A DNA stretch of 64,000 nucleotides from Mizuhopecten yessoensis (taxonomy: Eukaryota): NCBI RefSeq assembly GCF_002113885.1, contig NW_018405052.1, positions 11,418-75,417 of the forward strand, read 5' to 3'. Positions 1 to 58,100 of the stretch are shown here, piece by piece (within the stretch, counting starts at the first letter, position 1; every line of letters begins with the position of its first letter). A program made the translations under genes and the position numbers. Below the pieces are notes generated by a model. The model had not been told where the DNA came from and did no database searches. It saw nothing but the letters and a program-made list of their open reading frames with translations.

Positions 1-1380
1 TGTAACTATAGAAATGTTAAGGTGTGTCTCCTCTAACATCTGTCCATGTAACTATAGAATTGTTAAGGTGTGTCTCCTCTAACACCTGTCCATGTAACTA
101 CAGAAATGTTGAGGTGTGTCTCCTCTAACATCTGTCCTTGTAACTATAGAAATGTTAAAGTGTGTCTCCTCTAAAATCTGTCCTTGTAACTATAGAAATG
201 TTAAGGTGTGTCTCCTCTAACTCCTGTCCTTGTAACTATAGAAATGTTAAGGGGTGTGTCCTCTTACATCTGTCCTTGTAACTATAGAAATGATAAGGTG
301 TGTCTCCTCTAACATCTGTCCTTGTAACTACATAAATGTTAGGGTGTGTCTCCTCTAACATCTGTCCTTGTAACTACATAAATTTTAGGTTGTGTCACCT
401 CTAACATCTGTCCTTGTAACTATAGAAATGTTAAGGTTTGTCTCCTCTAACACCTGTCCTTGTAACTATAGAAATGTTAAGGTTTGTCTCCTCTAACACC
501 TGTCCTTGTTGTCTCCTCTAACATCTGTCCTTGTAACTACATAAATTTTAGGTTGTGTCACCTCTAACATCTGTCCTTGTAACTATAGAAATGTTAAGGG
601 GTGTCTCCTCTAACACCTGTCCATGTAACTGTAGAAATGTTAAGGTGTGTCTCCTCTAACTCCTGTCCTTGTAACTATAGAAATGTTAAGGTGCGTCTCC
701 TCTAACACCTGTCCTTGTAACTATAGAAATCTTAAGGTGTGTCTCCTCTAACACCTGTCCATGTAACTGTAGAAATGTTAAGGTGTGTCTCCTCTAACGT
801 CTGTCCTTGTAACTATAGAAATGTTAAAGTGTGTGTCCTCTAAAATCTGTCCTTGTAACTATAGAAATGGTAAGGTGTGTCTCCTCTAACATCTGTCCTT
901 TTAACTATAGAAATGTTAAAGTGTGTCTCCTCTAACATCTGTCTAGATAACTCTAGAAATGTTAAGGTGTGTCTCCTCTAACTCCTGTCCTTGTAACTAT
1001 AGAAATGTTAAGGTGCGTCTCCTCTAACACCTGTCCTTGTAACTATAGAAATGTTAAGGGGTGTCTCCTCTAACACCTGTCCATGTAACTGTAGAAATGT
1101 TAAGGTGTGTCTCCTCTAACACCTGTCCTTGTAACTATAGAAATGTTAAGGTGTGTGTCCTCTTACATCTGTCCTTGTAACTATAGAAATGTTAAGGTGT
1201 GTCTCCGCTAACACCTGTCCTTGTAACTATAGAAATGTTAAGCTGTGTCTCCTCTAACATCTGTCCTTGTAACTACATAAATGTTAAGGTGTGTCTCCTC
1301 TAACACCTGTCCATGTCACTATAAATGTTAAGGTGTGTCTCCTCTAACACCTGTCTAGATATAGAAATGTATAGGTGTGT
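1..1380. repeat. 46-bp minisatellite, about 30 copies, runs off the window start
   Basis: Unit tgtaactatagaaatgttaaggtgtgtctcctctaacatctgtcct. Confidence 0.95.
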
Positions 1381-4010: not shown

Positions 4011-4169
4011 ACACTTGCCCGAGAGGTTTTATGTCTGATGATGGTTTTCCTCCCTGCCGTCCCTGCGCTAAAGATTATTACTGGAGCAATTCTACATATT
4101 GTGAACAATGTCCACCCAATACCAGCACTGTAGAACAGAATGGCATGGGAGTTCTTGGGGATTGTAAAG
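4011..4169 (+). CDS. Exon 1 (in window): GCC2/GCC3 ephrin-receptor-like Cys-rich repeat
   Basis: tttcag|AC..AAAG|gtatgt, 159 nt, phase 1-1; TCPRGFMSDDGFPPCRPCAKDYY..CEQCP..DCK. Confidence 0.92.
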
Positions 4170-7100
4170 GTATGTTAAGCATTTATCTAATATTTTAAGT
4201 ATTTTCCCATTTGAACATAATACAGTAAACTTACACATTTTTGTGATGTGGCCACACGAGCCTTTAGACACACCTACCTTTTGAAAAACTAATATACACA
4301 GGCATTCGTCACAATTTATTACCCCTGTCCAATGAGGTTGGTAGGGGATATACAAATGGGTTTTCTTCCATGTGTCCGGTATTGCTTAAAAAGTCTTCTA
4401 GTTAACCTCATGAAACTTTGAAGGCGCATCATTCCAGTAGTCTAGTGTTGCTGTTTGATATTGAGGAGTTTTCATTTTTGACATTTTCCCAGTTGCCATG
4501 GAAATAAATAGCTGGAAATGCAAAAATTGTCGTTTCCGTAGCATACGTCAGGAACTGCTAGAGATAACTACCTAACTCTCTAACCACATGCATCTAGTTG
4601 TCCAGTAGTGCCTTCTGCTATTAGGGTAACCATAAGACTAAATAGCAGGAAATGCAAAAATAGTCAACTTATTCTTGATTAAATGCGTTCAACCTAGCAC
4701 ACTGTTGTCATGGTCATGTTTAACTATAGATAACTCTACTACTACAGCCGAACTCTTGCACAGAGATGTTGGATCTCCCAATCCCCGCAATTTATCTCAT
4801 GATGAAATCTGCCAGTAATTAATTCATAAAGAATAGAAATATCTTTGGTTTTAATGGTGTAAGATGGATTGATTTCTGACAAAAGGGGCAATTTCAGTGT
4901 ATTTTTTTCTTTTTTCATGGTTTGAATTACGTAGAAAAGAGGGAAAATGCAAATGAGTTTATTTAAAGGTCATAAAGGATATTTGAAATATATTCTTTCA
5001 GCTTAAGTAAGTCAAGTAAGGGATTGGTGCTGGAGTTTGTAAGGGGGAGGGGGGAACATAAGGATTTTAAATGTGGACATCTCCCCTTGCACACAAATTC
5101 TCCCTTAAAGACCCCCCCCCCCCCCCCTTTCCTCCCCTGTGTTGAATTTATTTGTATATTGTTTTTAGCTCACCTGCCCAAAGGGCAAGTGGGCTTATGC
5201 TATGACGCGCCATCCGTCTTCCGTCTGTTTGGCGTCAACTTTTTACTTTAAACAACTTTTTCTCAATAACCAAACAGCCTTGGATGATAATATTTGGCCA
5301 GGAGCATGCTGGGATAAAGGGCTACCAAGTTTGTTCAAACAAATGACCTTCACCCATTTTCAAGGTCACAGGGGTCAAATATGTTTAAAACTTTTGAACA
5401 ACTTCTCCTGAATACCAAAGATGCATAGGATCAAGATATTTGACAAGTATCATGCTCTGATGAAGGGCTACCAAGTTTGTTCAAATGAATGACCTTAATC
5501 TATTTTCAAGGTCACATATGTTTAAAACCTTTAAACAACTTCTTCTCAATAACAAAAAGGCCTTAGATGATGATATTTGGTCAGTAACATGGTGGGATGA
5601 AGGGCTACCAAGTTTTTTCAATCAATTGACCTGCACCCATCTTCAAGGTCACAGGGGTCAAATATATTTAAAACCTTTAAACAACTTCTCCTGAATACCC
5701 TACAAGATGCTTAGGATAATGATATTTGACCAGTATCACGCTGAGATGAAGGGCTACCAAGTTTGTTCAAACAAATGACCTTCACCCATTTTTAAAGTCA
5801 CAGGGGTGAAACATATTAAAAACCTTTCAACAACTTCTCCTCAATAACCAAAAGGCCTAGGATGATGATATTTGGCTAATATCATGCTTGGATGACTCAC
5901 GTTTTGACATACATATTTACTCGCATATTGACACACATACTGACATACATATTGACTCACTTACATATTGACACACATACTGACATACATATTGACTCAC
6001 ATATTGGCACACATACTGACATACATATTGACTCACTTACATATTAACACTCATACTGACAAACATATTGACTCACTTATGTATTGACACTCATACTGAC
6101 AAACATATTAACTCACTAATGTATTGACACTCATACTGACATACATATTAAGTCCCTTACGTATTGAAACACATATTGACACACATATTGACTCGCTTAC
6201 ATATTGACTCACATACTGACATACATATTGACTCACATACTGACAAACATATTGTCTAATTTACATATTGACTCACATTTTGACATACATATTGACACAA
6301 ACTGACAAACATATTGACTCACTTACATACTGACATATACTGACAAACATAATGACTCACTTACGTACTGACATATAATGACAAACATATTGACTCACTT
6401 ACATACTGATCGACATATACTGACAAACATATTGACTCGCTTACGTACTGACATACTGACAAACATTGACTCACTTACGTACTGACATATACTGACAAAC
6501 ATATTGACTCACTTACATACTGACATTAAGTGACAAACATATTGACTCACTTACATACTGACATACATATTGAATGGTGGTTGCAACTGATAAAATGTAG
6601 AACTGGATTTATATGATACTGACACAAAATGACCTGCTAATAAAATGTACCACATACGCTTTCCTTTTTTAGCTGAATGTCAGGCTGGAATGTTTTCCCC
6701 TACTGGCTATGAGCCATGTAAACCATGCCCAACAAATTTCTATCAGGTGTTGACTGGGCAGAAGGGATGTTTGGAATGTCCTGAAACACAGATAACAAAC
6801 AGTACTGGCAGTAACAGCTCAAACCAGTGTTGGACACCAGGTAAACCATTGTTTTGTGTGATATATAACGAGATATATAACTACCAGTACTAGCAGTATA
6901 AAGAACTTGAAGTAACAACTCAGCCCTGTGTGTTGTGTCAGTTAAACCATTGTTTTGTGAGATATATCACGACCAGTACTAGCAGTAACAACTCAGCCCT
7001 GTGTGTTATGTCAGTTAAACCGTGATTGTTTTGTGAGATATATAACGACCAGTACTGGCAGTAACAACTCAGCCCTGTGTGTTGTGTCAGGTAAACCATT

Positions 7101-10100
7101 GTTTTGTGAGATATATCATGACCAGTACTAGCAGTAACAACTCAGCTCTGTGTGTTGTGTCAGTTAAACCATTGTTTTGTGTGATATATCACGACCAGTA
7201 CTAGCAGTGACAACTCAGTCCTGTGTGTTATGTTAGGTAAACCATTTGTAAGAATTATTTATGATCATTCTTTGACTGCTATCTACTCTGTCACAATCAA
7301 AATGTCACACAAAAACTTTTCAATTGTTGTCATATATTAACCTGTATACAGTCTTCAATTACAAATCTAAAGAAAATGTTAAAAAAGCAGGAACTTATAC
7401 ATAGGAACCAATCACTAGTATCGGTACCACTTTGATATAGTTTATATAGTCTGTGGTATCATAGGAACCAATCACTAGTATAGGTACCACTTTGATATAG
7501 TTTATATAGTCTGTGATATCATAGGAACCAATCACTAGTATAGGTACCACTTTGTTATAGTTTGGGTAATCTGTGGTATCAAAGGAACCAATCACAAGTA
7601 TAGGTACCACTTTGATATAGTTTATATAGTCTGTGGTATCATAAGAACCAATCACTAGTATAGGTACCACTTTGTTATAGTTTATATAATCTGTGGTATC
7701 ACAGGAACCAATCACTAGTATAGGTACCACTTTGATATAGTTTATGTAATCTGTGATATCACAGGAACCAATCACTAGTATAGGTACCACTTTGTTATAG
7801 TTTATATAATCTGTGGTATCATAGGAACCAATCTCTAGTATAGGTACCACTTTGATTTAGTTTATATAATCTGTGGTATCATAGGAACCAATCACTAGTA
7901 TAGGTACTACTTTGATTTAGTTTATATAATCTGTGGTATCATAGGAACCAATCTCTAGTATAGGTACCACTTTGATTTAGTTTATATAATCTGTGGTATC
8001 ACAGGAACCAATCACTAGTATAGGTACCACTTTGTTATAGTTGATGTAATCTGTGGTATCACAGGAACCAATCACTAGTATAGGTACCACTTTGTTATAG
8101 TTGATGTAATCTGTGGTATCACAGGAACCAATCACTAGTATAGGTACCACTTTGATATAGTTTATATAATCTGTGGTATCATAGGAACCAATCACAAGTA
8201 TAGGTACCACTTCGTTATAGTTTATATAATCTGTGGTATCACAGGAACCAATCACTAGTATAGGTACTACTTTGTTATAGTTGATATAATCTGTGGTATC
8301 ACAGGAACCAATCACTAGTATAGGTAATATTTTGATATTATTCATATAATCTGTGGTGTCATAGGAACCAATCTCTAGTATAGGTACCAATTTGTTATAG
8401 TTTATATATCTGTGGTATCATAGGAACCAAGCTCTATTATAGGTACCACTTTGTAATAGTTTATGTAATCTGTGGTATCATAGGAACCAATCTCTATTAG
8501 TTTATATAGTCTGTGATATCATAGGAACCAATCACTAGTATAGGTACCACTTTGTTATAGTTGATGTAATCTGTGGTATCACAGGAACCAATCACTAGTA
8601 TAGGTACTATTTTGATATAGTTTATGTAATATGTGGTATCACAGGAACCAATCACTAGTATAGGTACTATTTTGATATTATTCATATAATCTGTGGTATC
8701 ATAGGAACCAATCTCTAGTATAGGTACCACTTTGTTATAGTTTATATATCTGTGGTATCATAGGAACCAATCTCTATTATAGGTACCACTTTGTAATAGT
8801 TTATGTAATCTGTGGTATCATAGGAACCAATCTCTAGTATAGGTACGATTTTGATATAGTTTATTTAATCTGTGGTATAATAGGAACCAATCACTAGTAT
8901 AGGTACTATTTTGTTATAGTTTATTTAATCTGTGGTATCATAGGAACCAATCTCTATTAGTTTATATAGTCTGTGATATCATAGGAACCAATCACTAGTA
9001 TAGGTACCACTTTGTTATAGTTGATGTAATCTGTGGTATCACAGGAACCAATCACAAGTATAGGTACCACTTCGTTATAGTTTATATAATCTGTGGTATC
9101 ATAGGAACCAATCTCTATTATACGTACCACTTTGTAATAGTTTATGTAATCTGTGGTATCATAGGAAACAGGAACCAATCACTAGTATAGGTACTATTGT
9201 GATATAGTTTATATAATCTGTGGTATCACAGGAACCAAGCACTAGGATAGGAACCACTTTGTTATAGTTTAGGTAATCTGTGGTATCATAGGAACCAATC
9301 TCTAGTATAGGTACCACTTTGTTATAGTTTCTGTAATCTGTGGTATCATAGGAACCAATCACTAGTATGGGTACCACTTTGATATAGTTTATATAATCTG
9401 TAGTATCACAGGAACCAATCACTAGGATAGGAACCATTTTGTTATAGTTTATGTAATCTGTGGTATCATAGGAACCAATCACAAGTATAGGTACCACTTC
9501 GTTATAGTTTATATAATCTGTGGTATCATAGGAACCAATCAATAGTATAGGTACCACTTTGATATAGTTTATATAATCTGTGGTATCACAGGAACCAATC
9601 ACTAGGATAGGAACCACTTTGTTATAGTTTATGTAATCTGTGGTATCATAGGAACCAATCTCTAGTATAGGTACCACTTTGTTATAGTTTATGTAATCTG
9701 TGGTATCATAGGAACCAATCTCTAGTATAGGTACTATTTTGATATAGTTTATTTAATCTGTGGTATCATAGGAACCAATCTCTAGTATAGATACCACTTT
9801 GTTATAGTTTATATAATCTGTGGTATCACAGGAACCAATCACAAGTATAGGTACCACTTTGTTATAGTTTATGTAATCTGTGGTATCATAGGAACCAATC
9901 TCTAGTATAGATACCACTTTGTTATAGTTTATATAATCTGTGGTATCACAGGAACCAATCTCTAGTATAGGTACCACTTTGTTATAGTTTATATAAGCTT
10001 TTTGAAGTACACCTCTTTCATTCATGTTTTAGAATTATGTCCTGCATCTCCCACACCATGCAGTGGAAATGGTTCATGCAGTGTGAAAAACCATGAAAAG

Positions 10101-13100
10101 TTCTGCAACTGCAATTCAGGTATTTAGAGTGACACCGCCAATACCAGCCTGTATTAATAACAATGTTACAATATAATTAAAAGGAAAATATGTTTTGTAG
10201 CTTTTGGATTAGCAATTACATGAATAAAATTGGAACGTTGTATAAAAGATTATTGTGGCCCCTTATATATATAATTAGGGCGGAGGAGCAGAACTGAATA
10301 GGGTAAATAGGAGACTTAAGTCTGCATGTGTCAGGTGCAAGGCAGGCTAGTCTGAGACCAGTGAAATCTCCATCTGGACTAGCTAGTGGTTTTAAAAGCT
10401 GCTAGTCCAATTTTCTAGACAAAATTTTAAATTACTTATAACGTTCAATGATATTGGGTGAGTAGAATTTGCACAAGGACTAGTAAAATGAAGTATACCG
10501 TTGATGATCCTGAAGAGATGAAAACACTCAGGCTACCAATATATTTGACATGGCATAATCATTTGTGTGTGAGGTGTAATGGCGGATACCTATTGGATGT
10601 ATATGGTAGGGCTAGTGACATCAAATATCCCTAATCCTTTACCTGGGCCCGTATATATGAAACCGTTCTCATGCTCAAGCATGGATTCTGATGTGCTGAA
10701 GCCAACTTTCTTGTTACTCGCTTAAATCCTGTAAAACAATCAAAAAGTCAAATGTAAACATTGAAACAGTAGTTAGCTTCAAGTCTCTTCAAAATGTTTC
10801 CAAAGCATTGACAAAATAAGATGTATTTATTAAGTTACAACAAGAACAATAAGTTAGACTTGAGCACAAAATCCATGCTTGAGCATGAGAACGGTTTCAT
10901 GAATACGGGCCCTGTACTAATGGAGAAAAGTAGTCTTTTTACATTATACATTGTATTGGTATGGAAGTTAGACCATTATGTATTTTAATTATTCAGATGA
11001 TTTGTTTAAGGAAGTATTCAGAAATGCAATCCTGATTGCAATGTGAATTTCTGGTGATTAAGGTGTTGTATTTTTTGTGTGCTATATTTTTAACAGGATA
11101 CTATGGTATGTGTAAGTTTTGTGTGCTATATTTTGGACAGGATACTATGGTATGTGTAATTTTTGTGTGCTATATTTTTGACAGAATACTATGGTATGTA
11201 TGTATGTGTAAGTTTTGTGTGCTATATTTTGGACAGGATACTATGGTATGTGTAATTTTTGTGTGCTATATTTTTTGACAGAATACTATGGTATGTATGT
11301 ATGTGTAAATTTTGTGTGCTATATGTTTGACAGGATACTCTGGAAGCGATTGTCAACTCATGAACAATTTCTGTGATGAGAGTCCTTGTGTCAGAGGAAC
11401 TTGTAATAATAACCAAGGTATTAGCTTCACCTGCACATGCGATACAGGTAAGTTATTTAAATTTTCAGAGAAAATTGGGGATATTAATTTGAGTGTATCT
11501 GTATGTTTTAAACATAGTATTGGAATGTTGGGAGAAAAATAATCATCCCCTACCTTGAGGGTGTGAAAGGGAATTCTCCAACCCTTGAAATGATTGTTTG
11601 AGCCAAGGGTTGGACAACCAAATGATCAACCTGAGAGTTGGAGATTCTTTGTCACACCCTCAACGTAGGAAAAGATTCTATTTATCCTACATATGAATAT
11701 TACTTCCTCCTTTATATAAAAATGAAGTCGTTCAGACTCCCCTTTTATTTTAAGGTTCTATTTTCGATTCAAAAGTCACCATTTTTGGTGGCCAGGTGAT
11801 GCTGTTTCTTTTCTAGACCAACTTTTTTTCAAAAACTAGTGCTCAACAAATTCTGTGGACAATGTCAGTCAATACTCAGAATTAATGCTTACAGGTTTTA
11901 CTGGGGACCGGTGTGATAGAGACACTACAAACCGTTGTACACCAAACACTTGCCAAGCTGGATCATGTAGAAATATAAAGAACGGTGCTGACTGTCTCTG
12001 TCCTCTTACTGGAGGATTCACACAGCCAAGGTAAGTAAAATATCTGGTCCTATATATCATAAACAGAACACAGCTTCATATTTTGATTCCCAAAATTTAC
12101 TTTTTGCTTTTCAGTAACAGGTCATTTCAGTTTATTAGGCCCCCGCATTGGAGATGGGGGTGCACTATAGTAATCAGTGTCCATTCACAATTTTATTTCC
12201 GACCTTATCTCCGAAACCAAAAGGCCTACCTTTCTGAAATTTGAAACGGTGATACCCTGTGAAATGTAAATGACAATACAGGATCATACCTGCTAATCCC
12301 TGAATCTCCCAATGGGGGTCATGACCCCTATTGGAAAAATCTGTGGGCGGTGATAACGCATGACAAAAAATTCACGTCAAAATTAATCATTTAATTTTTG
12401 CGACGTCACGGCATAACATATGTAATTGTGTCTTCTGGTATGGTTTAGGACTTTTTTAAAATAAATAAAACAACTCTTATTTTCACACATTTTGTTTTAT
12501 TACATTCTCTCTTTTCAAAATACTGATTTCCCTGTACATACAGGTAGTTTGAGTTAATTGTAGAAAACTTGGCATCTGATGCATACTGGAAGCATGAACT
12601 CATCTAGAAGCTCCTCTATCTATTTCTCCCTCTCATCTGCATGTACTACATTGGGAATCTGACTGTCTGCAGGTTGGAAACTGGAAAAAATAAAATATGC
12701 ATTTATGTTAAATACAGATTTTAAAGCAATCTTGCGATCGCGATATGGGAAAGCATTTTCATGCAGATTTTGGTAAATTAGAATGATCTGTCGTTGAGAA
12801 AGTAATATGCTCAGCACTGAAGTTGCTTAATAACGTGACTTTGCGTTTATAACCTTGTCGTCAGACATTGGAAATTCGATAATCGTATGTTTTATCATAA
12901 AACGCACCCCTACCTATCGAAAATAATTAAGTATACAGTACAGTTTACAATAAGAATGATCAGGCTCAATATTTTTATGACATAACAAAGCCACTCAAAA
13001 TCCCTTTTCCACAAAGTATTACAATAGCAGACATACTTTTTTTTTTTCTACGTTTAACGCAGTCCGAATTACGGTTGTGCATGTGAAATCGCACTGTTGT

Positions 13101-16100
13101 AATAGTAAACAGTACTCGCCTTTCAAATTTGCCTGGCTTCCACGAAAGAGAGACTGCCATTGTGAAAACATTTCAAATGGTGTACAGACTTTACCCATAA
13201 GTTAATGCTAAGACATACTAATACGAGCATGGATGCGAGTGATTCCGGGTCATGTTGACGGAATGCGGGAGATTTGTATCACCGGCGTGGGTCATAAGTT
13301 GGTTGCATTGCGGGTGATAAGTTAATTTTGCGGGTGTGACCCGCAGGATGCAGGTCATTTAGCAGGTATGCAGGTTGAGCAATTTTATAAGGTCCAGGGT
13401 TGAGGTCATTGTTACTAAAGCTAGACCATAGGAGTACATTCCTTATCTTGGAGAATCCGGAAGTCTATTGTTTGGAAGTTTGGTGATATACTGTGATAAT
13501 TATGTAGATGTGCAAGAGCTTGAGAGGTTTAAAAAGTTACGGCCAAGATAAGGGTCACTGTTACTAAAAACAGATTTTGGGGGTGGTCAGTCACGCACAT
13601 GGTGAGGCCTTTGCTGACCTGTCAGTGTTCTGGTTCATGCTAATTCACTTAAAAGTAAAGGTATATATAGCAAATGGTCCGTCCATCTGATTCTAATTTT
13701 GTCAGCTGAATCTTCTCTAATAAAAACCTCACAGATATGTTTATCAAGAGCCGATGATGTGTGTCCTGTAACATTCTCAGCTCTATAACCTACAGGTCAA
13801 GGTCAGATCAAAGGCCAAATAACCATAAAGCATAAGGTCATATCTTCTAAATGGCTCAGATAACTGATATTTAGCCGGAAGCTTTCTGAGGTAAAGTGGT
13901 ATCACAATTGTTGAGATAAATGTTCTTCACAGACATTTTCAAGGTCACAAGTCCCTTGAGAAATATGTGTTCAAATCATCGAATGACACATTCTTCAGAA
14001 CCATTTAGCATAGAGTTCTGTATTTTGCCTTTAAATTATTGTTGGGTGAAGCCAGCTTACTTTTATTCAAATAAATGCCCTTGACCTTCAATCAAAATTA
14101 CAAGGGTCAAAAGTTGTTAAAAAGGTTTAAAGGACTCCTTCTGATGAAACACGAGTAATACTATTAAGCCTGTATTGTTGTGGGGTCAGGTACATTGGTA
14201 AATACCCAGGTTAAATTGATCTTAATTTCACAGGGACCAACTGCCTTGATATTTTGAATACTTTCTTCTTGATAACGATGAAAAATGCAGTTGTGATATT
14301 TAGCCTTAATCAGCTTGTACCTGTTGGGAGTAACTGCTCAAATATGCATCAAAGCTGTTGTAATAAATAAGAAATAACTTAGTCAGAAGTTACAGTTGGT
14401 TAGCTCACCAGACCATTAGACTAACAGAACTACTAGGCCTGTATTCATTAGCTTTTCAGGAGTTATAGGCTATAATTGAGCAAGCTAGCCTCTAGTTTTG
14501 AGAAAGCTTGCTTATATACTTATTTATTTAGTAAAAGAACATCAGTCTTTCCTTTAATTTATCTGTGTTTTGAAAACCTAGATACATATTGTGAGTTGCT
14601 TTTACTGTTATATTTATGAAAGGCAATGATAATAATACAAGCATCACTCATTTCCTGTTTTATTTTGAAACTGAATAATTGTTGTAAAAAGGCAGATTTA
14701 GTATTGTGTAAAAGTTATTTTCTAAGTCTTTGTTATTTCCTTTGATTATAGCTGTGAACGTTTGGACAACTTGTGTGCTGGCATCCAGTGTTCTAATGGC
14801 GGTACCTGTGTCGCCTTTGGGTCTGTTCGTAAACAATGTCTCTGTCAGCCGGGATATACTGGTGAAAACTGTGAAATCAATATAAGTAAGTAAAGTGTGG
14901 CGTGTAATGGAACACCTAGAGCTCACAATAATGTATTGTAAAAAAAGAAGTCACGTTAGAGAGAAGGATATCGTTATTGTTTGGTAACATAGCATCTGGT
15001 ACAGCATACAAGTAATGTTTTATATTATAAGTGTCCTAATGGTATGAACTCAGTGGCTTAATACAAACATACTTATTATTGAGTCTTACGTAATAAAGCA
15101 ATACATTTGTTTTATGCAGATGAGTGTACTTTGAACCCACAAGGCTGTTTGTATAATGGCACATGTAGTGACGGTGTCAACGCCTACAGCTGCCAGTGTA
15201 GACCTGGCTTCAGTGGTAACAGGTGCCATGTCCGTAACAACTTCTGCAGCACTGACCCTTGTGCAGATGCTGAATGCTACAACGACTATGACAACTATAA
15301 ATCAGTATGCGTATGTCATGATGGATTTGAAGGTACTATCATGGAGTGTTAAAATTCATTTTGCATCCATATTCAGAATTTCTTTAAATCTTAAAAGGGT
15401 TACAAATCTGAAAGATGAATATCTTGTTTGAAAAAGAAAATATAATTATACATTTTTGCCAAAGATTGTGCTATTAAATCCCAAACTGTTTGATACAGCA
15501 ACAGTATCATTGTTGTTGGTAATTTTAAAATGCAATAAAGAGAAAATTTAATGGATTTCCATTTCGATACCATATGTATCTATTTCACTTGTATGGGATA
15601 ATATTCTGATGTTTCCACTCATGAAAAATATATATTGTACTCAACATAAAAAACCAATATATATTCACAAAACATTCGTATGGCAAACTTTACCGTTATT
15701 TTTACTGTGAAAAATATCAGTATCCTGCAATACTCGTGACATTAGCTCTGAAGAGCTAGAAGAGTTATTATGACGACAAAACATAAGAATAAATATCATT
15801 GCAAGGTAATAAAACATATTTATCATCTATACATATACTACTTTATACCACCTACCAGTAGCATGATAAATTCATTATCATTGGTTGTCAGTATGAAAAA
15901 TAGTTGAGAAAGGCTTGAGAAGAACTTAAGAACGGATTTCCCCATCTCCAGCACTTGGGAACGTATTTTCTCAAAAAAGAACGTCTGCTCGCTCCAGATG
16001 ACGTCCGAAACCGGAAATAGTGTCCAAACAAAAATGATCTGTGTAAGAAAATGGTCTGTCATAAACATATCAATACAAAGTTAGGAAAAATATTGTGAGA

Positions 16101-46100: not shown

Positions 46101-49100
46101 AGCTTATGAATTACCATATAAACAGACCCATTGTTTATAGTGTCTGTGTACCACTATATACATAGGCCCAGTGTGTATTGTGTCTGTGTACCACTATATA
46201 TATAACCCCAGTGTTTATAGTGTCTGTGTTTCACTATATACATAGCCCCTGTGTTTATAGTGTCTGTGTACCACAATATACATAGCCCCAGTGTTTATTG
46301 TGTCTGTGTTTTGATATATACATATCCCCTGTGTTTATAGTGTCTGTGTTTCACTATATACATAGCCCCTGTGTTTATAGTGTGAATAGCTTATGAATTA
46401 CCATATAAACAGACCCATTGTTTATAGTGTCTGTGTACCACTATATACATAGCCCCAGTGTGTTCACTATATACATAGCCCCAGTGTGTATTGTGTCTGT
46501 GTACCACTATATCCATAGCCCCAGTGTTTATTGTGTCTGTGTTTCACTATATACATAGCTCCATTGTTTATAGTTTCTGTGTTCCACTATATACATAGCC
46601 CCAGTGTTTATTGTGTCTGTGTTTCACTATATACATAGCTCCATTGTTTATAGTGTCTGTGTACCACTATATACATAGCCCCAGTGTGTATTGTGTCTGT
46701 GTTTCACTATATACATAGCCCCAATGTGTATTGTGTCTGTGTACCACTATATACATAGCCCCAGTGTGTATTGTGTCTGTGTACCACTATATCCATAGCC
46801 CCAGTGTTTATTGTGTCTGTGTTTCACTATATACATAGCCCCAATGTGTATTGTGTCTGTGTACCACTATATACATAGCCCCAGTGTTTATAGTGTCTGT
46901 GTTTGACTATATACATAGCCCCAGTGTGTATTGTGTCTGTGTTTCACTATATACATAGCCCCAATGTGTATTGTGTCTGTGTACCACTATATACATAGCC
47001 CCAGTGTTCATAGTGTCTGTGTACCACTATATACATAGCCCCAGTGTTTATAGTGTCTGTGTTTTGATATATACATAACCCCTGTGTTCATAGTGTCTGT
47101 GTTTCACTATATACATAGCCCCTGTGTTTATAGTGTCTGTGTTTCACTATATACATAGCCCCAATGTGTATTGTGTCTGTGTACCACTATATACATAGCC
47201 CCAGTGTGTATTGTGTCTGTGTTTCACTATATACATAGCCCCAATGTGTATTGTGTCTGTGTACCACTATATACATAGCCCCAGTGTTTATAGTGTCTGT
47301 GTTTCACTATATACATAGCCCCTGTGTTTATAGTGTCTGTGTTTCACTATATACATAGCCCCTGTGTTTATAGTGTCTGTGTTTCACTATATACATAGCC
47401 CCAGTGTTTATTGTGTCTGTGTACCACTATATATACATAGCCCCAGTGTTTATTGTGTCTGTGTTCTGATATATACATAGCCCCAGTGTTTATAGTGTCT
47501 GTGTTTTGATATATACATAACCCCAGTGTTTATTGTGTCTGTGTTTATAGTGTATGTGTACCTGTTTATACATAACCCCAGTGTTTATAGTGTCTGTGTT
47601 TCACTATATACATAGCCCCAGTGTGTATTGTGTCTATGTACCACTATATACATAGCCCCAGTGTTTATTGTGTCTGTGTACCACTATATACATAGCCCCA
47701 GTGTGTATTGTGTGTGTTTCACTATATACATAGCCCCAGTGTTTATTGTGTCTGTGTACCACTATATACATAGCCCCAGAGTTTATAGTGTCTGTGTACC
47801 ACTATATACATAGCCCCAGAGTTTATAGTGTCTGTGTACCACTATATACATAGCCCAAGTGTTCATAGTGTCTGTGTACCACTATATACATAGCCCCAGT
47901 GTGTATTGTGTGTGTTTCACTATATACATAGCCCCAGTGTTTATTGTGTCTGTGTTTCACTATATACATAGCTCCAATGTGTATTGTGTCTGTGTACCAC
48001 TATAGTCATAGCCCCAGTGTTTATTGTGTCTGTGTACCACTATATACATAGCCCCAGAGTTTATAGTGTCTGTGTACCACTATATACATAGCCCCAGTGT
48101 GTATTGTGTCTGTGTTAGACTATATACATAGCCCCCGTGTGTATTGTGTCTATGTACCACTATATACATAGCCCCAGTGTTTATAGTGTCTGTGTTTCAC
48201 TATATACATAGTCCCAGTGTTTATTGTTTTTGTGTTAGACTATATACATAGTCCCAGTGTTCATAGTATCTGTATACCACTATATACATAGTCCCAGTGT
48301 TCATAGTGTCTGTATACCACTATATACATAGTCCCAGTGTTCATAGTGTCTGTATACCACTATATACATAGTCCCAGTGTTCATAGTGTCTGTATACCAC
48401 TATATACATAGCCCCAGTGTTTATAGTGTCTATGTACAACTATGTATTCATAGCCCCAGTTTTTATAGTGTCTGTGTACCACTATATACATAGCCCAAGT
48501 GTTCATAGTGTCTGTGTACCACTATATACAAAGCCCCAGTGTTCATAGTGTCTATGTACCACTATGTATTCATAGCCCCAGTTTTTATAGTGTCTGCGTA
48601 CCACTATATACATAGCCCCAGTGTTTATTGTGTCTGTGTACCACTATATACATAGCCCCAGAGTTTATAGTGTCTGTGTACCACTATATACATAGCCCAA
48701 GTGTTCATAGTGTCTGTGTACCACTATATACAAAGCCCCAGTGTTCATAGTGTCTATGTACCACTATGTATTCATAGCCCCAGTTTTTATAGTGTCTGTG
48801 TACCACTATATACATAGCCCAAGTGTTCATAGTGTCTGTGTACCACTATATACAAAGCCCCAGTGTTCATAGTGTCTATGTACCACTATGTATTCATAGC
48901 CCCAGTTTTTATTGTGTCTGTGTACCACTATATACATAGCCCCAGAGTTTATAGTGTCTGTGTACCACTATATACATAGCCCAAGTGTTCATAGTGTCTG
49001 TGTACCACTATATACATAGCCCAAGTGTTCATAGTGTCTGTGTACCACTATATACATAGCCCCAGTGTTTATAGTGTCTATGTACCACTATGTATTCATA

Positions 49101-52100
49101 GCCCCAGTTTTTATAGTGTCTGTGTACCACTATATACATAGCCCCAGTGTTCATAGTGTCTATGTACCACTATGTATTCATAGCCCCAGTTTTTATAGTG
49201 TCTGTGTACCACTATATACGTAGCCCAGGGTTTATAGTGTCTGTGTCATTCTTTGGAAGGTCAGTAAATTTAATATTATTTTTCTTTCCAGGGAAATACT
49301 GTCAGTTCCTGTGGATGGTGTCTCAGTGACCTTTTTGCCCTTTGAAGCCTTGACATATGTAGTGTATAATACTGATACTATGGATTTTGAGGTAAGCAGG
49401 AGTTTTTAGTGAATATTGTGTCCTTATATTACATGTCTCAATACGGGATTCACTAGATGTCAGATTTTGTAGAGTGAATTTTTACTCCATCATAGGTCAG
49501 TGTTTTATTTTGTATGAGGTTTAACATTCACTAATGCCCATTTTCCCCATCATTAAATCTGTGTAACATTTTTTTTGGAGGATTTGTTTGCCTACATACT
49601 ATAATTGTTTCAGCCCTTGCCCTTATTCTCAAGGAACAGAAACAGTGTGTAATTTTCATCTTCTCTGTTCTTTTCAGCTAGTTACAGCTGGAGCTATTCT
49701 ACGAAAAAATGTTCAGTCTATCACTATAACACAGTCAATGTCTTGTGCCAGTGGATACCAGCTTGTTGGTGAACAATGTGGTAAGTATACACAAATGATG
49801 GGACTGGACATCAGATAGTGGTCAGTGTGGTAAGTATACACAACTGATGGGACTGGACATCAGATGGGGGTCAGTGTGGTAAGTATACATAACTGATGGG
49901 ACTGGACATCAGATGGGGGTCAGTGTGGTAAGTATACATAACTGATGGGACTGGACATCAGATGGGGGTCAGTGTGGTAAGTATACATAACTGATGGGAC
50001 TGGACATCAGATGGTGGTAAGTGTAATAAGTATACACAACTGATGGGATTGGATATCAGATGGTGGCCAGTGTGGTAAGTATACATAACTGATGGGACTG
50101 GACATCAGATGGTGGTCAGAGTGATAAGTATACACAACTGATGGGACTGGACATCAGATGGTGGTCAGTGTGATAAGTATACACAATTGATGGGACTGCA
50201 TATCAGATGGTGGTCAGTGTGATAAGTATACACAATTGATGGGACTGCATATCAGATGGTGGTCAGTGTGATAAGTATACACAACTGATTGGACTGGACT
50301 TCAGATGGTGGTCAGTGTGATAAGTATACACAATTGATGGGACTGCATATCAGATGGTGGTCAGTGTGGTAAGTATACACAACTGATGGGGCTGGACATC
50401 AGATGGTGGTCAGTGTGATAAGTATACACAACTGATTGGACTGGACATCAGATGGTGGTCAGTGTGATAAGAATACATAACTGATGGGACTGGATATTTG
50501 ATGGTGGTCAGTGTGGTAAGTATACACAACTGATGGGGCTGGACATCAGATGGTGGTCAGTGTGATAAGTATACACAACTGATGGGACTGCATATCAGAT
50601 TGTGGTCAGTGTGGTAAGTATACACAACTGATGGGGCTGGACATCAGATGGTGGTCAGTGTGATAAGTATACACAATTGATGGGACTGCATATCAGATGG
50701 TGGTCAGTGTGATAAGTATACACAACTGATGGGACTGCATATCAGATTGTGGTCAGTGTGGTAAGTATACACAACTGATGGGGCTGGACATCAGATGGTG
50801 GTCAGTGTGATAAGTATACACAATTGATGGGACTGCATATCAGATGGTGGTCAGTGTGATAAGTATACACAACTGATTGGACTGGACTTCAGATGGTGGT
50901 CAGTGTGATAAGTATACACAACTGATGGGACTGCATATCAGATTGTGGTCAGTGTGGTAAGTATACACAACTGATGGGACTGGACATCAGATGGGGGTCA
51001 GTGTGGTAAGTATACATAACTGATGGGACTGGACATCAGATGGGGGTCAGTGTGGTAAGTATACATAACTGATGGGACTGGACATCAGATGGTGGTCAGT
51101 GTGATAAGTATACACAACTGATGGGACTGGACATCAGATGGTGGTCAGTGTAATAAGTATACACAACTGATGGGATTGGATATCAGATGGTGGTCAGTGT
51201 GGTAAGTATACATAACTGATGGGACTGGACATCAGATGGTGGTCAGAGTGATAAGTATACACAACTGATGGGACTGGACATCAGATGGTGGTCAGTGTGA
51301 TAAGAATACATAACTGATGGGACTGGATATTTGATGGTGGTCAGTGTGGTAAGTATACACAACTGATGGGCCTGGACATCAGATGGTGGTCAGTGTGATA
51401 AGTATACACAACTGATGGGACTGNTGTTCATGCTCCTGTGTTTCAGTTCAATGCTATAACTGTGGTGACTAGTATGTTCATGCTCCTGTGTTTCAGTTCA
51501 GTGATATAACTGGTGACTAGTATGTTCATGTTCCTTTGTTTGGGTTCAATGCATTAACTGTGGTGACTAGTATGTTCATGTTCCTGAGTTTGTGTTCAAT
51601 GCTTTAACTGTGGTGACTAGTATGTTCATGTTCCTTTGTGTGTGTTCAATGCTTTAACTGTGGTGACTAGTATGTTCATACTCCTGTGTTTGTGTTCAAT
51701 GCTAGAACTGTGGTGACTAGTATGTTCATGCTCCTGTGTTTGTGTTCAATGATATAACTGTGGTGACTAGTATGTTCATACTCCTGTGTTTGTGTTCAAT
51801 GCTAGAACTGTGGTGACTAGTATGTTCATGCTCCTGTGTTTCAGTTCAGTGATATAACTGGTGACTAGTATGTTCATGTTCCTTTGTTTGTGTTCAATGC
51901 TTTAACTGTGGTGACTAGTATGTTCATGCTCCTGTGTTTGTGTTCAATGCTATAACTGGTGACTAGAATGTTCATGTTCCTTTGTTTGTGTTCAATGCTT
52001 TAACTGGTGACTAGTATGTTCATGTTCCATTGTTTGTGTTATATGCTATAACTGTGGTGACTAGTATGTTCATGCTCCTGTGTTTGTGTTCAATGCTATA

Positions 52101-55100
52101 ATTGGTGACCAGTATTTCATGCTCCTGTGTTTCAGTTCAATGCTATAATTGTGGAGACTATGATGTTCATGTTCCTTTGTTTGTGATCTATGCTATAACT
52201 GTGGAGACTAGTATGTTCATGCTCCTGTGTTTCATTTCATTGCTATAACTGTGGAGACTAGTATGTTCATGCTCCTGTGTTTCAGTTCAATGCTTATAAC
52301 TGTGGAGACTAAAATGTTCATGCTCCTGTGTTTCAGTTCAATGCTATAACTGTGGTGACTTTAATATATTCATGTTTCTGTGTTTCAGTTCAATGCTATT
52401 ACTGTGGAGACTAAAATGTTCATGCTCCTGTGTTTCAGTTCAATGCTTATAACTGTGGAGACTAGTATGTTCATGCCCCTGTGTTTCAGTTCAATGCTTA
52501 TAACTGTGGTGACTAGTAAGTTCATGCTCCTGTGGTTCAGTTCATTGCTATAACTGTGGAGACTAGTATGTTCATGCTCCTGTGTTTCAGTTCAATGCTA
52601 AAACTGTGGAGACTAAAATGTTCATGCTCCTGCCTGTGTTTCAGTTCAATGCTATAACTGTGGTGACTAGAAGTTCATGCTCCTGTGTTTCAGTTCAATG
52701 CTATAACTGTGGAGACTAAAATGTTCATGCTCCTGTGTTTCAGTTCAATGCTTATAACTGTGGAGACTAAAATGTTCATGCTCCTGTGTTTCAGTTCAAT
52801 GCTATAACTGTGGTGACTAGTATGTTCATGCTCCTGTGTTTCATTTCAATGCTATAACTGTGGAGAGTAGTATGTTCATACTCCTGTGTTTGTGTTCAAT
52901 GCTATAACTGTTGTGACAAGTATGTTCATGCTCCTGTGTTTCAGTTCAATGCTATAACTGTGGAGACTAAAATGTTCATGCTCCTGTGTTTCAGTTCAAT
53001 GCTATAACTGTGGTGACTTTAATATGTTCATGTTTCTGTGTTTCATTTCAATGCTATAACTATGGAGACTAAAATGTTCATGTTCCTTTGTTTGTGTTCA
53101 ATGCTATAACTGTGGTGACTAGTATGTTCATGCTCCTGTATTTGTGTTCAATGCTATAACTGGGGACCAGTATGTTCATGCTCCTGTGTTTGTGTTCAAT
53201 GCTATAACTTGTGACTAGTATGTTCATGCTCCTGTATTTGTGTTCAATGCTATAACTGGTGACCAGTATGTTCATGCTCCTGTGTTTGTGTTCAATGCTA
53301 GAACTGGTGACTAGTATGTCATGTTCCTTTGTTTGTGTTCAATGCTTTAACTGTGGTGACTAGTATGTTCATGTTCCTTTGTCTTTGTTCAATGCTTTAA
53401 CTGTGGTGACTAGTATGTTCATGTTCCTTTGTTTGTGTTATATGCTATAACTGTGGTGACAAGTATGTATGTTCATGCTCCTGTGTTTGTGTTCAATGCT
53501 ATAACTGGTGACTAGTATGTTCATGTTCATTTATTTTTGTTCAATGCTTTAACTGTGGTGACTAGTATGTTCATGCTCCTGTGTTTCATTTCAATGCTAT
53601 AACTGTGGAGACTAGTATGTTCATGCTCCTGTATTTCAGTTCAATGCTATAACTGTGGTGACTAGTATGTTCATTCTCCATTGTTTCAGTTCAATACTAT
53701 AACTGTGGAGACTAGTATGTTCATGCTCCTGTGTTTCATTTCAATGCTATAACTGTGGAGACTAGTATGTTCATGCTCCTGTATTTCATGTGTTTGTGTT
53801 CAATGCTATAACTGGTGACTAGTTTGTTCATGCTCCTGTGTTTGTGTTCAATGCTATAACTGTGGTGACTAGTATGTTCATACTCCTGTGTTTGTGTTCA
53901 ATGCTATAACTGGTGACCAGTATGTTCATGCTCCTGTGTTTGTGTTCAATGCTATAACTGTGGTAACTAGTATGTTCATACTCCTGTGTTTTTGTTCAAT
54001 GCTTTAACTGTGGTGACTAGTATGTTCATACTCCTGTGTTTGTGTTCAATGCTATAACTGGTGACTAGTTTGTTCATGCTCCTGTGTTTGTGTTCAATGC
54101 TATAACTGGTGACCACTATGTTCATGCTCCTGTGTTTGTGTTCAATGCTATAACTGGTGACTAGTATGTTCATGTTCCTTTGTTTGTGTTCAATGCTTTA
54201 ACTGTGGTGACTAGTATGTTCTTGTTCCATTGTTTGTGTTATATGCTATTACTTAGGTGACTAGTATGTTCATGCTCCTGTGTTTGTGTTCAATGCTTTA
54301 ACTGTGGAGACTAGTATGTTCATGCTCCTGTGTTTCAGTTCAATGCTATAATTGGTGACCAGTATGTTCATGTTCCTTTGTTTGTGTTCTATGCTATAAT
54401 TGTGGAGACTATGATGTTCATGCTCCTGTGTTTCATTTCAATGCTATAACTGTGGAGAATAGTATGTTCATGTTCCAGTGTTTCAGTTCAATGTTATAAC
54501 TGTGGTGACTAAAATGTTCATTCGCCTGTGTTTGTGTTCAATGCTATTACCGGTACTGTAGAGACTACTATGTTCATGCTCCTGCGTTTCAGCTCAATGC
54601 TATTACTGTGGAGACTAGGATGTTCATGCTCCTGTTTTTGTGTTCAATGCTATTACTGTGGAGACTAGTATGTGCATGCTCCTGTGTTTTATTTCAATGC
54701 TATAACTTGTGACTAGTATGTTCTTGTTCCATTGTTTGTGTTATATGCTTTAACTGTGGTGACTTGTATGTTCATGCTCCAGTGTTTCAGTTCAATGTTA
54801 TAACTGTGGTGACTAGAAGTTCATGCTCCTGTGTTCCAGTTCAATGATATAATTGGTGACTAGTATGTTCTTGTTCCATTGTTTGTGTTATATTCTATAA
54901 CTGTGGTAACTAGTATGTTCATGCTGTGTTTTTGTTCAATGCTTTAACTCTGGTGACTAGTATGTTCTTGTTCCATTGTTTGTGTTATATTCTATAACTG
55001 TGGTAACTAGTATGTTCATGCTGTGTTTTTGTTCAATGCTTTAACTCTGGTGACTAGTATGTTTATGTTCCTTTGTTTGTGTTATATTCTATAACTGTGG

Positions 55101-58100
55101 AGACTTAAATGTTCATGCTCCTGAGTTTCAGTTCAATGATATGACTGTGGAGACTAGTATTTTCATGCTCCTGTGTTCCAGTTCAATGATATAATTGGTG
55201 ACTAGTATGTTTATGTTCCTTTGTTTGTGTTCAATGCTATTACCGGTACTGTAGAGACTACTATGTTCATGCTCCTGCGTTTCAGCTCAATGCTATTACT
55301 GTGGAGACTAACATGATCATGCTCCTGAGTTTCATTTTAATGCTATAACTGTGGTAACTAGTATGTTCATGTTCATTTATTTTTGTTCAATGCTTTAACT
55401 CTGGTGACTAGTATGTTCAAGTTCCTTTGTTTGTGTTATATTCTATAACTGTGGTAACTAGTATGTTCATGCTTCTGTGTTTCAGTTCAAGGCTGTAACT
55501 GTGGTGACTAAAATGTTCATGCTACTGTGTTTCAGTTCAACGCTATAACTGTGGAGAATAGTATGTTCATGTTTCTGTGTTTCAGGTCAATGCTATAACT
55601 GTGGAAACTAGTATGTTCATGCTCTTGTGTTTGTGTTCAATGCTTTAACTGTGGTGACTTGTATGTTCATGCTCCTAGTATGTTCATACTCCTGTGTTTG
55701 TGTTCAATGCTTTAACTCTGGTGACTAGTATGTTTATGTTCCTTTGTGTTCAATGCACTAACTGTGGTGACTAAAATGTTCATTCGCCTGTGTTTGTGTT
55801 CAATGCTATAACGGTGGTGACTAGTATGTTCTTGTTCCATTGTTTGTGTTATATGCTTTAACTGTGGAGACTAAAATGTTCATGCTCCGGTGTTTCAGTT
55901 CAATGTTATAACTGTGGTGACAAGTATGTATGTTCATGCTCCAGTGTTTCAGTTCAATGTTATAACTGTGGTGACTAAAATGTTCATGCTACTGTGTTTC
56001 AGTTCAACGCTATAACTGTGGAGACCAAAATGTTCATGCTCATGTGTTTCAGTTCAACGCTATAACTGTGGAGACCAAAATGTTCATGCTCATGTGTTTC
56101 AGTTCAAGGCTGTAACTGTGGTGACTAAAATGTTCATTCGCCTGTGTTTGTGTTCAATGCTTTAACTGTGGTGACTAGTATGTTCATGCTCCTGTGTTTC
56201 AGTTCAATGCTGTAACTGTGGTTACTTTAATATATTCATGTTTCTGTGTTTCAGTTCAATGCTGTAACTGTGGTGACTAAAATGTTCATGCTCCTGTGTT
56301 TGTGTTCAATGCTATTACCGGTACTGTAGAGACTACTATGTTCATGCTCCTGTGTTTCAGTTCAATGCTATAACTGTGGTGACTAGTATGTTCATGTTTC
56401 TGTGTTTCAGTTCAATGATATAACTGTGGAGACTAGTATGTTCATGCTCCAGTGTTTCAGTTCAATGCTTATAACTGTGGTGACTAGTATTTTCATGCTC
56501 CTGTGTTTCAGTTCAATGCTATAACTGTGGAGACTTAAATGTTCATGCTCCTGTGTTTCAGTTCAATGCTTTAACTGTGGAGACTAGTATGTTCATGCTC
56601 CTGTGTTTCATTTCATTGCTATAACTGTGGAGACTAAAATGTTCATGCTCCTGTGTTTGTATTCAATGCTATAACTGTGGAAACTAGTATGTTCATGTTC
56701 CAGTGTTTCAGTTCAATGCTATAACGGTGGTGACTATAATGTTCATGTTCCTGTGTTTCAGTTCAATGCTATAACTGTTGTGACTAGTATTTTCTTGCTC
56801 TTGTGTTTCAGTTCAATGCTATAACTGTGGAGACTAGTATGTTCATGCTCCTGTGTTTCATTTCAATGCTATAACTGTGGAGACTAAAATGTTCATGTTC
56901 CTGTGTTTGTGTTCAATGCTTTTTTTGGAGACTCGTATGTTCATGCTCCTGTGTTTCAGTTCAATGTTCCGCGGGCCAGTACTATGACACTAACACCAAG
57001 ATGTGTAAGTTTTGCCAGAAGAACACCTACCTGGATGAAGCTGGACAAACCATCTGTAAACCTTGTGATGGCAATAAGGTTACGTTGAATGAGGGAGCTA
57101 CTTCTCAAAGTCTTTGTGTTGGTATGTTACCTTACCGGTAATTTGTAAATTGATGGTTAAGATCTGTATATTTCCATGTTGATGACATTTCTATATGCCT
57201 GTCGTTAACAAAACGTTGCATAATAGTAAACCTTACTATGGTCTATCAATCCATCCATCTGTTAAATTTCCCTTGTCATTGCTCTCCTGCCTTTATAAAT
57301 AGATTGTCTTGAACCCCAGATAACTTGTATATGCTTGTCTACTCTTTTGACAAGTACATTGGTATCAGAAGCATGTATCTGTCCATCTGCACTTCAAGAT
57401 TACTTGCTTAGATATATCTTTCAATTTTGTTGATAATTATTGTACTCTTTATGTAAAACAACTTGACGTACATGAATTAATATTGAGTGTAGCCCCAGCA
57501 AAATGCATTTTAGAAGCTATGTGTTTTAAGTCACAGTGTTTTACGAATATCATTAAACAGATATCTTATGCTTTTTCTAGTGAACTTTTGTCACTTAAAA
57601 ATTGAGTATACATGATATGGCCTACGAAATCATTTCTTTGTGATTAAGTAACTGTTCCAAACTTTATATAAATGGGAGTGATAGTATGTTTACTACTGAG
57701 CAATAAGGACATGAAAAACTGTCTGATGTCTTGTACTTAATCTTCAACAACAACAAGAGCATCAGTATTTTTTTCTGTTCTTTAACTCATTCACCCCTGA
57801 AATTTCTTAATGAACTATTCCAACCTTTGAATTGGAAGAGTTCAAATGTGTCTTTAGGGGTGAATGAGCTGGTACTCAAGGATACTTGTACCTCGCCAAA
57901 AATGTAACTAAGTATTGGAAAGCTGTTTTTTCCACATGAATATAGGTTTGATAAATAACTTATGAAGAGAAAAGCACACCTTGCAGGACCTAATGAAAAA
58001 AATTGCAAAGGTGAAATAAACACAATGTCATCAACAACAGTGCCTGAACAGTAAAAATTCCCTGGACATTACACCACCAGTATTCAAACCCTGGACTTCA

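What the first reader, a model, noticed from the sequence alone, without database searches (positions are those of the whole stretch)
6800..56966. Gene-wide pattern: intronic tandem arrays seeded at the gene's own splice junctions
Seen: six unrelated arrays have a unit that spans an exon-intron boundary of this gene. Three are donors (exon 2, 73 bp; exon 8, 61 bp; exon 22, 49 bp) and three are acceptors (exon 4, 44-52 bp; exon 10, 42 bp; exon 23, about 50 bp). Three more are candidates (exon 13 donor, exon 10 donor, the array at 1..1380). In each case the exon-proximal copy is the one compatible with an intact domain, and the array extends into the intron as decoy splice sites. Inference: junctions are a tiny fraction of the 60-kb gene, so this looks like a strong positional bias. 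It suggests either a mutational process focused on splice junctions (e.g. transcription/splicing-coupled breaks with slippage or rolling-circle copying) or a tolerated route to new splice variants. Tandem duplication of AG|GT segments is an established route to new introns, but I do not recognise this recurrence in one gene as a described system.
Basis: partly seen in the sequence, partly recalled or inferred. Interest (0 to 1): 0.9.

Follow-up and report, generated by a model that had tools for sequence, protein, structure and literature searches.

The report
Splice-junction minisatellites in a scallop gene
Six repeat arrays in the introns of one large Yesso scallop gene really are copied from the gene's own exon-intron junctions, but this repeat type is already known ("mirages") and its excess over chance here is modest.

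Summary
The window carries 29 exons of a Mizuhopecten yessoensis gene (public model "Fibropellin-1": Ephrin-receptor-like, EGF and LamG-like repeats). About 46% of the window is minisatellite arrays.

All six named arrays contain a splice junction plus 4 to 49 nt of exon: donors of exons 2, 8 and 22, and acceptors of exons 4, 10 and 23. Of the three candidates:
- The array at 1..1380 runs upstream, through a gap, to the donor of an exon outside the window.
- The exon 10 and exon 13 donor arrays start 88 and 54 nt inside the intron, so they do not span a junction.

An mRNA contig uses the first donor of the exon 8 array. It also fits the last acceptor of the exon 10 array.

The kind is known: amphioxus "mirages", and human F7, IFI6, CBS, LMNB2 and PDGF minisatellites. 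This scan has also noted it on other DNA of this genome.

The "strong positional bias" is weak. With arrays collapsed to one unit, 1.3 to 2.0 junction arrays are expected in the window and 6 are seen (P about 0.002 to 0.01, post hoc). At 134 junctions elsewhere I found 3 against 2.4 expected. The likeliest reading is ordinary local tandem duplication, tolerated because splicing keeps the exon-proximal site.

The parts
4011..63917 (+). 29 exons of a large extracellular-matrix-type gene (public model P0001 'Fibropellin-1', Mizuhopecten yessoensis; Ephrin_rec_like, EGF and LamG_3 repeats). The gene continues beyond both ends of the window.
   Evidence: tblastn of P0001 gives 95-100% identity and all junctions are GT..AG. 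Pfam exon by exon and on P0001. Name and species.
6792..7246 (+). Exon 2 donor array: 73-bp unit, about 6 copies. The first copy is the true junction (49 nt of exon plus the intron start).
   Evidence: The unit is found only at this locus in the 988-Mb genome.
11073..11343 (+). Exon 4 acceptor array: 44/52-bp units (96-bp higher order), about 6 copies. The last copy is the true acceptor plus 10 nt of exon.
   Evidence: Unique to this locus.
17666..18076 (+). Exon 8 donor array: 61-bp unit x6.7. Each copy carries CAG|GTGAGT. The first copy is the donor used in mRNA.
   Evidence: RNA joint 17673->19405. Unique to this locus.
21541..22257 (+). Exon 10 acceptor array: 42-bp unit x17, in frame. The last copy is the true acceptor plus 31 nt of exon.
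   Evidence: The RNA contig matches only the 31 nt shared with true exon 10, and there is no RNA depth on array copies. Unique to this locus.
49777..51423 (+). Exon 22 donor array: 49-bp unit x33.6. It starts 4 nt before the donor, with weak further likeness to the exon tail.
   Evidence: The same unit family also forms an array on contig C3950.
51425..56966 (+). Exon 23 acceptor array: 50-bp unit x110. It ends 7 nt into exon 23.
   Evidence: Found at this locus plus small unplaced contigs only.
1..1380 (+). 3' part of a 46-bp array. It reaches, across a 2730-N gap, to 3 nt after the donor of an upstream exon outside the window (C1725:8223|8224).
   Evidence: The degenerate unit copy at C1725:8227-8286 beat all 2000 shuffles.
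22508..24158 (+). Two 20-bp arrays in intron 10. They start 88 nt after the exon 10 donor and do not span a junction.
27628..30592 (+). 24-bp array in intron 13 with the assembly gap 28753-29334 inside it. It starts 54 nt after the exon 13 donor and does not span a junction.
51424..51424 (.). Single N (scaffold join) between the donor-type and acceptor-type arrays of intron 22. The sequence between them is unknown.

Best explanation
These are 'mirage'-type minisatellites. Short segments of 40-75 bp that straddle an exon-intron junction were duplicated in tandem, by replication slippage or unequal exchange, and then expanded like any other minisatellite of this repeat-rich genome.

They persist because they cost little. 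At a duplicated donor the first copy, and at a duplicated acceptor the last copy, still adjoins the intact exon. That copy is the one spliced, so all further copies lie in the intron.

Arrays seeded wholly inside exons are removed by selection, and arrays in introns are tolerated. In a gene with many small exons, whose introns are now mostly arrays, several arrays will sit on junctions.

Shown: the anatomy, the local origin of five units, and use of the proximal site at exon 8. The RNA at exon 10 is consistent with use of the proximal acceptor.

Inferred: the duplication mechanism and near-neutrality.
For: - Anatomy: six arrays contain a junction plus 4-49 nt of exon.
- Local origin: five of six units occur nowhere else in the 988-Mb assembly.
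- RNA: an mRNA contig (7.4 kb, run X17) joins exon 8 from its first donor to exon 9. It then joins exon 9 to just the 31 nt that an array unit shares with true exon 10. RNA depth on further copies is zero or about 2.
- Independent DNA: contigs of another study reproduce the entries into both arrays without differences (X7).
- Array-collapsed null: 1.3-2.0 expected against 6 in the window, and 1.8-2.5 against 7 for the sampled gene.
- Replicate elsewhere in the genome: 3 observed against 2.4 expected at 134 junctions.
- The same type at other genes: C835, C4809 x2 and C1012.
- The literature describes the same structures with normal splicing (PMC3087553, PMC1557585).
Against: - This gene still shows a roughly 3-fold excess (P 0.002-0.013), though the test is post hoc on a window picked for this pattern.
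- Four of six arrays carry only 4-10 nt of exon, fewer than a uniform seed would give.
- The 49-bp unit also forms a large array on another contig, which simple local duplication does not explain.
- Copy numbers come from a gapped short-read-era assembly.
Confidence: 0.6

Rival explanations
1. A mutational process focused on splice junctions seeds tandem duplications there more often than elsewhere. Candidates are breaks coupled to transcription or splicing, or copying from RNA templates.
For: There is a roughly 3-fold excess in this gene. Array edges lie within 10 nt of the junction in four of six cases. Further arrays in the 3' part of the gene start 3-7 and 22 nt after donors. Splice-like motifs in array units are somewhat more often on the sense strand, 17 against 10.
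Against: The replicate at 134 other junctions gave 3 against 2.4 expected (P=0.43). The strand asymmetry is not significant. The window was chosen because of the pattern. The excess shrinks further if younger transposon DNA is removed from the null.
Confidence: 0.2
2. Some arrays were not born from the junction. An intronic minisatellite whose unit happens to hold a good splice site expanded, or lost its spacer, up to the exon edge, which is a selective barrier. It now supplies the working splice site.
For: The 49-bp family also exists as an array of at least 5.3 kb on C3950, with no exon of this gene nearby. The acceptor arrays of exons 4 and 23 show no likeness to the exon beyond 10 and 7 nt. 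An array at C835:223697 ends exactly at the acceptor AG with 0 nt of exon.
Against: The exon 2 and exon 10 arrays carry 49 and 31 nt of exon sequence. The exon 22 tail resembles the unit, most clearly the C3950 consensus (p=0.016), and the exon 8 tail marginally (p=0.06). Both point to a junction origin. A precise fusion to a unit's GT or AG is a rare event.
Confidence: 0.1
3. The arrays are functional. They would act as decoy or recursive splice sites that tune splicing, or as a copy-number-coded in-frame insert (the 42-bp array adds 14 codons per copy).
For: The 42-bp array stays open in frame across 17 copies. The 61-bp units look like complete mini-introns, GT..TTAAC..CAG|GT.
Against: RNA contigs show only the proximal sites, with zero to about 2x depth on the other copies. 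One 14-codon unit is stop-free by chance about half the time, and its near-identical copies are not independent tests. No conservation test was possible.
Confidence: 0.06
4. The arrays are assembly artefacts.
For: The assembly is gapped, with N runs inside two of the arrays. Short-read contigs break inside the arrays.
Against: DNA contigs from a separate 2022 study match the exon-to-array entries exactly. They also show raised depth on the first 42-bp units, about 111 against about 10. The arrays have internal variants and higher-order periods. The same structure type is seen at other loci.
Confidence: 0.03

Closest known systems
[quoted passage not shown]
   Same: Tandem units contain a splice junction with exon and intron parts. 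Both donor and acceptor sides occur. Units are 10-160 bp. Regular splicing is kept, and the mechanism is stated as unclear (PMC3087553).
   Different: This is a mollusc, not a cephalochordate. There are up to 110 copies and at least 7 such arrays in one gene. Somatic or allelic length instability, shown for Adh3, could not be tested here.
Human F7 intron 7 37-bp VNTR, and the similar minisatellites of IFI6 (6-16), CBS, LMNB2 and PDGF
   Same: The first monomer spans the exon-intron boundary, so the donor is reiterated as pseudo-sites. In F7, LMNB2 and PDGF only the most upstream site is used (PMC1557585). The exon 8 array here behaves the same way.
   Different: Those are single arrays per gene and donor-side only. 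Here acceptor-side arrays are equally common. IFI6 and CBS use the first two pseudo-sites as well, which was not seen here.
Intron gain by tandem duplication of an AGGT-containing exon segment
   Same: It also rests on a tandem duplication that creates paired splice signals (PMC3265369 and PMC4974935, listed; not read in full).
   Different: That process duplicates exon-internal sequence and creates a new intron. Here the existing junctions are duplicated and no new intron or exon is seen in RNA.

Membership tests
Mirage-type splice-junction minisatellite | Head-to-tail array of a short unit (about 10-160 bp) | tested here: met
   TRF: units of 42-73 bp, 4.6 to 110 copies, 79-95% matches.
Mirage-type splice-junction minisatellite | The unit contains an exon-intron boundary, with both an exon part and an intron part | tested here: met
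   Six arrays carry 4-49 nt of exon. The case is clearest for exons 2 and 10 (49 and 31 nt). For exon 22 only 4 nt are strictly periodic.
Mirage-type splice-junction minisatellite | The authentic site is still used and the mRNA is normal | tested here: met
   Shown for the exon 8 donor by an RNA joint. The RNA at the exon 10 acceptor is consistent with this. The other four rest on the predicted protein P0001 only.
Mirage-type splice-junction minisatellite | The unit derives from the local junction and not from a dispersed repeat | tested here: inconclusive
   Five units are unique to the locus. The 49-bp unit also forms an array on C3950.
Mirage-type splice-junction minisatellite | Copy-number instability between alleles or tissues | not testable with these tools
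   Short-read contigs collapse the arrays, and no long reads were available.
Intron gain by AGGT tandem duplication | A duplication inside an exon creates a new intron that is spliced out | tested here: not met
   The arrays sit on existing junctions. The RNA contig shows no extra exon or intron at exons 8-10.
Recursive (ratchet-point) splicing | Juxtaposed AG|GT sites inside an intron that are used stepwise | tested here: inconclusive
   The motif is present in every 61-bp unit. The final mRNA is the same with or without stepwise removal, and contigs cannot show intermediates.

The most novel reading that the evidence does not exclude
Scallop genomes may have a real splice-junction-focused process that seeds minisatellites several-fold above chance. 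Junction-born minisatellites may then escape to found arrays elsewhere, as the exon 22 donor unit may have done on contig C3950. Gene junctions would then be a source of new satellite DNA.
Probability: 0.15. Interest if true: 0.6.

Novelty: new member of a known kind. Interest (0 to 1): 0.3.

Why it matters
The finding adds a mollusc, and an unusually loaded gene with at least seven junction arrays, to a little-studied repeat class.

That class offers natural tests of how the spliceosome chooses among identical sites. It has also been proposed as a route to new introns.

The main practical points are cautionary:
- Apparent hot spots at junctions must be judged against an array-collapsed null.
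- Gene models in such loci are fragile, and the public model of this gene is cut short at its 5' end.

Tried and rejected
- The original mirage paper (PMC117041) is not held.
I laid 17300-21960 instead, so true exon 10 itself was not in the laid stretch.
- The cross-species comparison failed. The orthologues in Ylistrum balloti and Argopecten irradians span 136 and 119 kb and no DNA was returned.
Only about 20 kb of its 3' part was examined.
- Exon likeness beyond the strict array edge was marginal for exon 22 (p=0.05, or 0.016 against the C3950 consensus) and exon 8 (p=0.06). It was absent for exons 4 and 23.
- Sense-strand excess of AGGT or splice-like motifs in array units was not significant.
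- Array ends within 10 nt of a junction: my rough count is 4 against about 1.7 expected, which is not significant.
- The C3950 array is not next to a paralogue, and its flanks are essentially single-copy.
- I found no paper on such repeats in scallops in the held library.
Exons were searched one by one by reference. Junctions were placed by comparing short exon-end translations with the public protein P0001 inside a script.
Full report
**What is there.** The window is G000:C1725:11418-75417 of a 988-Mb assembly. The public protein P0001 ("Fibropellin-1 [Mizuhopecten yessoensis]", 2563 aa, encoded on a 743,724-base contig) maps to it at 95-100% identity. Residue-exact GT..AG junctions give 28 exons, and one more Ephrin_rec_like exon lies upstream at 4011-4169. 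Exon-by-exon Pfam searches by reference, and Pfam on P0001, show Ephrin_rec_like, EGF and LamG_3 repeats. I built no joined spliced model and sent none to a search. TRF finds about 24 distinct arrays covering 29.6 kb, which is 46% of the window.

**The observation.** All six main arrays include a junction:
- Exon 2 donor: 49 nt of exon in the unit.
- Exon 4 acceptor: 10 nt.
- Exon 8 donor: 8 nt.
- Exon 10 acceptor: 31 nt.
- Exon 22 donor: 4 nt strictly periodic.
- Exon 23 acceptor: 7 nt.

Two candidates fail. The exon 13 and exon 10 donor arrays begin 54 and 88 nt inside the intron. The third candidate is supported. The 46-bp array at 1..1380 continues across 2730 N to C1725:8227, which is 3 nt after the donor of an upstream Ephrin_rec_like exon. 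The degenerate copy there scored above all 2000 shuffles.

**The gaps.**
- 28753-29334 lies inside the 24-bp array of intron 13. The flanking units agree at 23 of 24 positions. Their phase differs by 1 nt at the estimated gap length, so continuity cannot be established. No coding frame is at stake, and exons 13 and 14 are consecutive in P0001.
- The single N at 51424 lies between the two arrays of intron 22. Whether that intron holds anything besides the arrays is therefore unknown.

**Are the arrays real, and which sites are used?** I laid reads on 17300-21960.
- A 7.4-kb RNA contig (run X17) covers exon 8 and joins 17673 to 19405, so the first donor of the 61-bp array is used.
- The same contig joins 19547 to an array acceptor for exactly 31 letters. 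That is the length an array unit shares with true exon 10, so this fits use of the last acceptor at 22227. The true exon was outside the laid stretch because the tool refuses repeats of over 12 copies.
- RNA depth on further array copies is zero or about 2.
- DNA contigs from a separate study (X7) match the exon 8-to-array and intron-to-42-bp-array entries with no differences. They also show raised depth on the first 42-bp units.
- Copy numbers remain uncertain.

**Local origin.** Units of the exon 2, 4, 8, 10 and 23 arrays occur only at this locus, apart from small unplaced contigs. The 49-bp exon 22 unit is different.
- It also forms an array of at least 5.3 kb at C3950:102672-112008.
- No exon of this gene lies within 76 kb of that array, and almost no other DNA is shared.
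- Its flanks are essentially single-copy.
- The C3950 consensus is closer to the exon 22 tail than the window's own array is (p=0.016).

This remains unexplained.

- Window. Collapsing each array to one unit gives 35.4 kb with 58 junctions. Random seeds that are not wholly exonic span a junction 1.3-2.0 times among 19-24 arrays, against 6 observed (P=0.0016-0.011).
- Whole sampled gene. Adding about 20 kb of the gene's 3' part contributes one more spanning array, a 51-bp acceptor array at L047:3348-3487. The totals become 7 observed against 1.8-2.5 expected (P=0.002-0.013).
- These tests are post hoc, on a window flagged for this very pattern.
- Independent replicate. I took 83 other Ephrin_rec_like exon hits in the genome. 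Their exon structure is conserved: 45 of 49 full-length hits have AG exactly 16-15 nt before the domain start. I inferred 134 junctions and ran TRF on 181 kb. Three true junction arrays appeared, at C835:250685, C4809:333560 and C4809:333136, against 2.4 expected (P=0.43).
- Inspection found two more cases at exons not in that test: C1012, with 21 nt of exon, and C835:223697, where the array ends at the AG.
- Arrays cover 15% of those loci against 46% here.
- Sense-strand excess of splice-like motifs in array units is not significant.

So the structures are common in this genome. Their excess over random seeding is at most 2- to 4-fold, and my replicate did not reproduce it.

**Mechanism.**
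- Most likely (about 0.6) these are ordinary minisatellites. They were born by local tandem duplication of a 40-75-bp segment that happened to straddle a junction, then expanded. They are tolerated because the exon-proximal site keeps being used.
- A real junction-focused mutational bias stays possible (about 0.2).
- For the arrays with only 4-10 nt of exon, an intronic array carrying a usable splice site may have come to abut the exon (about 0.1). The C3950 array and the sharp acceptor edges fit that reading. The 31-49-nt exon parts of the exon 10 and exon 2 arrays do not.
- Function (about 0.06) and assembly artefact (about 0.03) are unlikely on the RNA and DNA evidence.

**Known or new.** Tandem repeats spanning exon-intron boundaries are described as "mirages" in amphioxus Adh3 and globin genes. 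Those cases show normal splicing, both junction types and an unknown mechanism (PMC3087553). Human F7, IFI6, CBS, LMNB2 and PDGF have donor-spanning minisatellites, and in F7, LMNB2 and PDGF only the first site is used (PMC1557585). Earlier notes of this scan gave me the term and report the same repeat type on other DNA of this genome. I checked the literature myself and tested the genome-wide claim only in part. I found no scallop paper in the held library. The finding is a new member of a known kind. It is notable for the load in one gene, not for a new principle.

Noticed in passing
G000:C3950:102672-112008 (L008, L012): The 49-bp unit of the exon 22 donor array forms a second array of at least 5.3 kb on another contig. 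No exon of this gene is nearby and the flanks are essentially single-copy. Its consensus is nearer to the exon 22 tail than the window's own array is.
   Followed up: partly
window 6645 and 4011-4169; G000:C1725:~8090-8223: The public protein model P0001 starts at an ATG inside intron 1 (6645). It misses at least two upstream Ephrin_rec_like exons, so the annotated gene is cut short at its 5' end.
   Followed up: partly
window 19640-20420; also 5246-5895 and 31405-32818: This is a very high-copy dispersed repeat. Summed DNA contig depth reaches 3x10^5 against about 10 for unique sequence, and it is also abundant in RNA runs. It shares the roughly 146-bp unit that forms arrays at 5246-5895 and 31405-32818. 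It is probably a transposon-linked satellite family and not locally derived.
   Followed up: partly
L047:3348-3487, L047:777-1232 and L048:8042-8849 (G000:C1725, 3' of the window): The 3' part of the same gene has one more acceptor-spanning array (51-bp unit, about 24 nt of exon). It also has two arrays that begin 22 nt and 3-7 nt after donors.
   Followed up: partly
L030 (C835:250685), L020 (C4809:333136 and 333560), L037 (C1012), L028 (C835:223697): Other genes with Ephrin_rec_like exons carry the same kind of junction array. Units are 20-53 bp with 0-29 nt of exon.
   Followed up: partly
G000:C1725:885-2078 (L009): A 42-bp array (x28) sits near the contig start, and its unit contains a donor-like GAG|GTAAGG. 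Its relation to any exon was not examined.
   Followed up: no
window 1-64000 against 34 other loci: Minisatellite arrays cover 46% of this window but 15% of 181 kb around comparable exons elsewhere in the genome. I do not know why this locus is so loaded.
   Followed up: no
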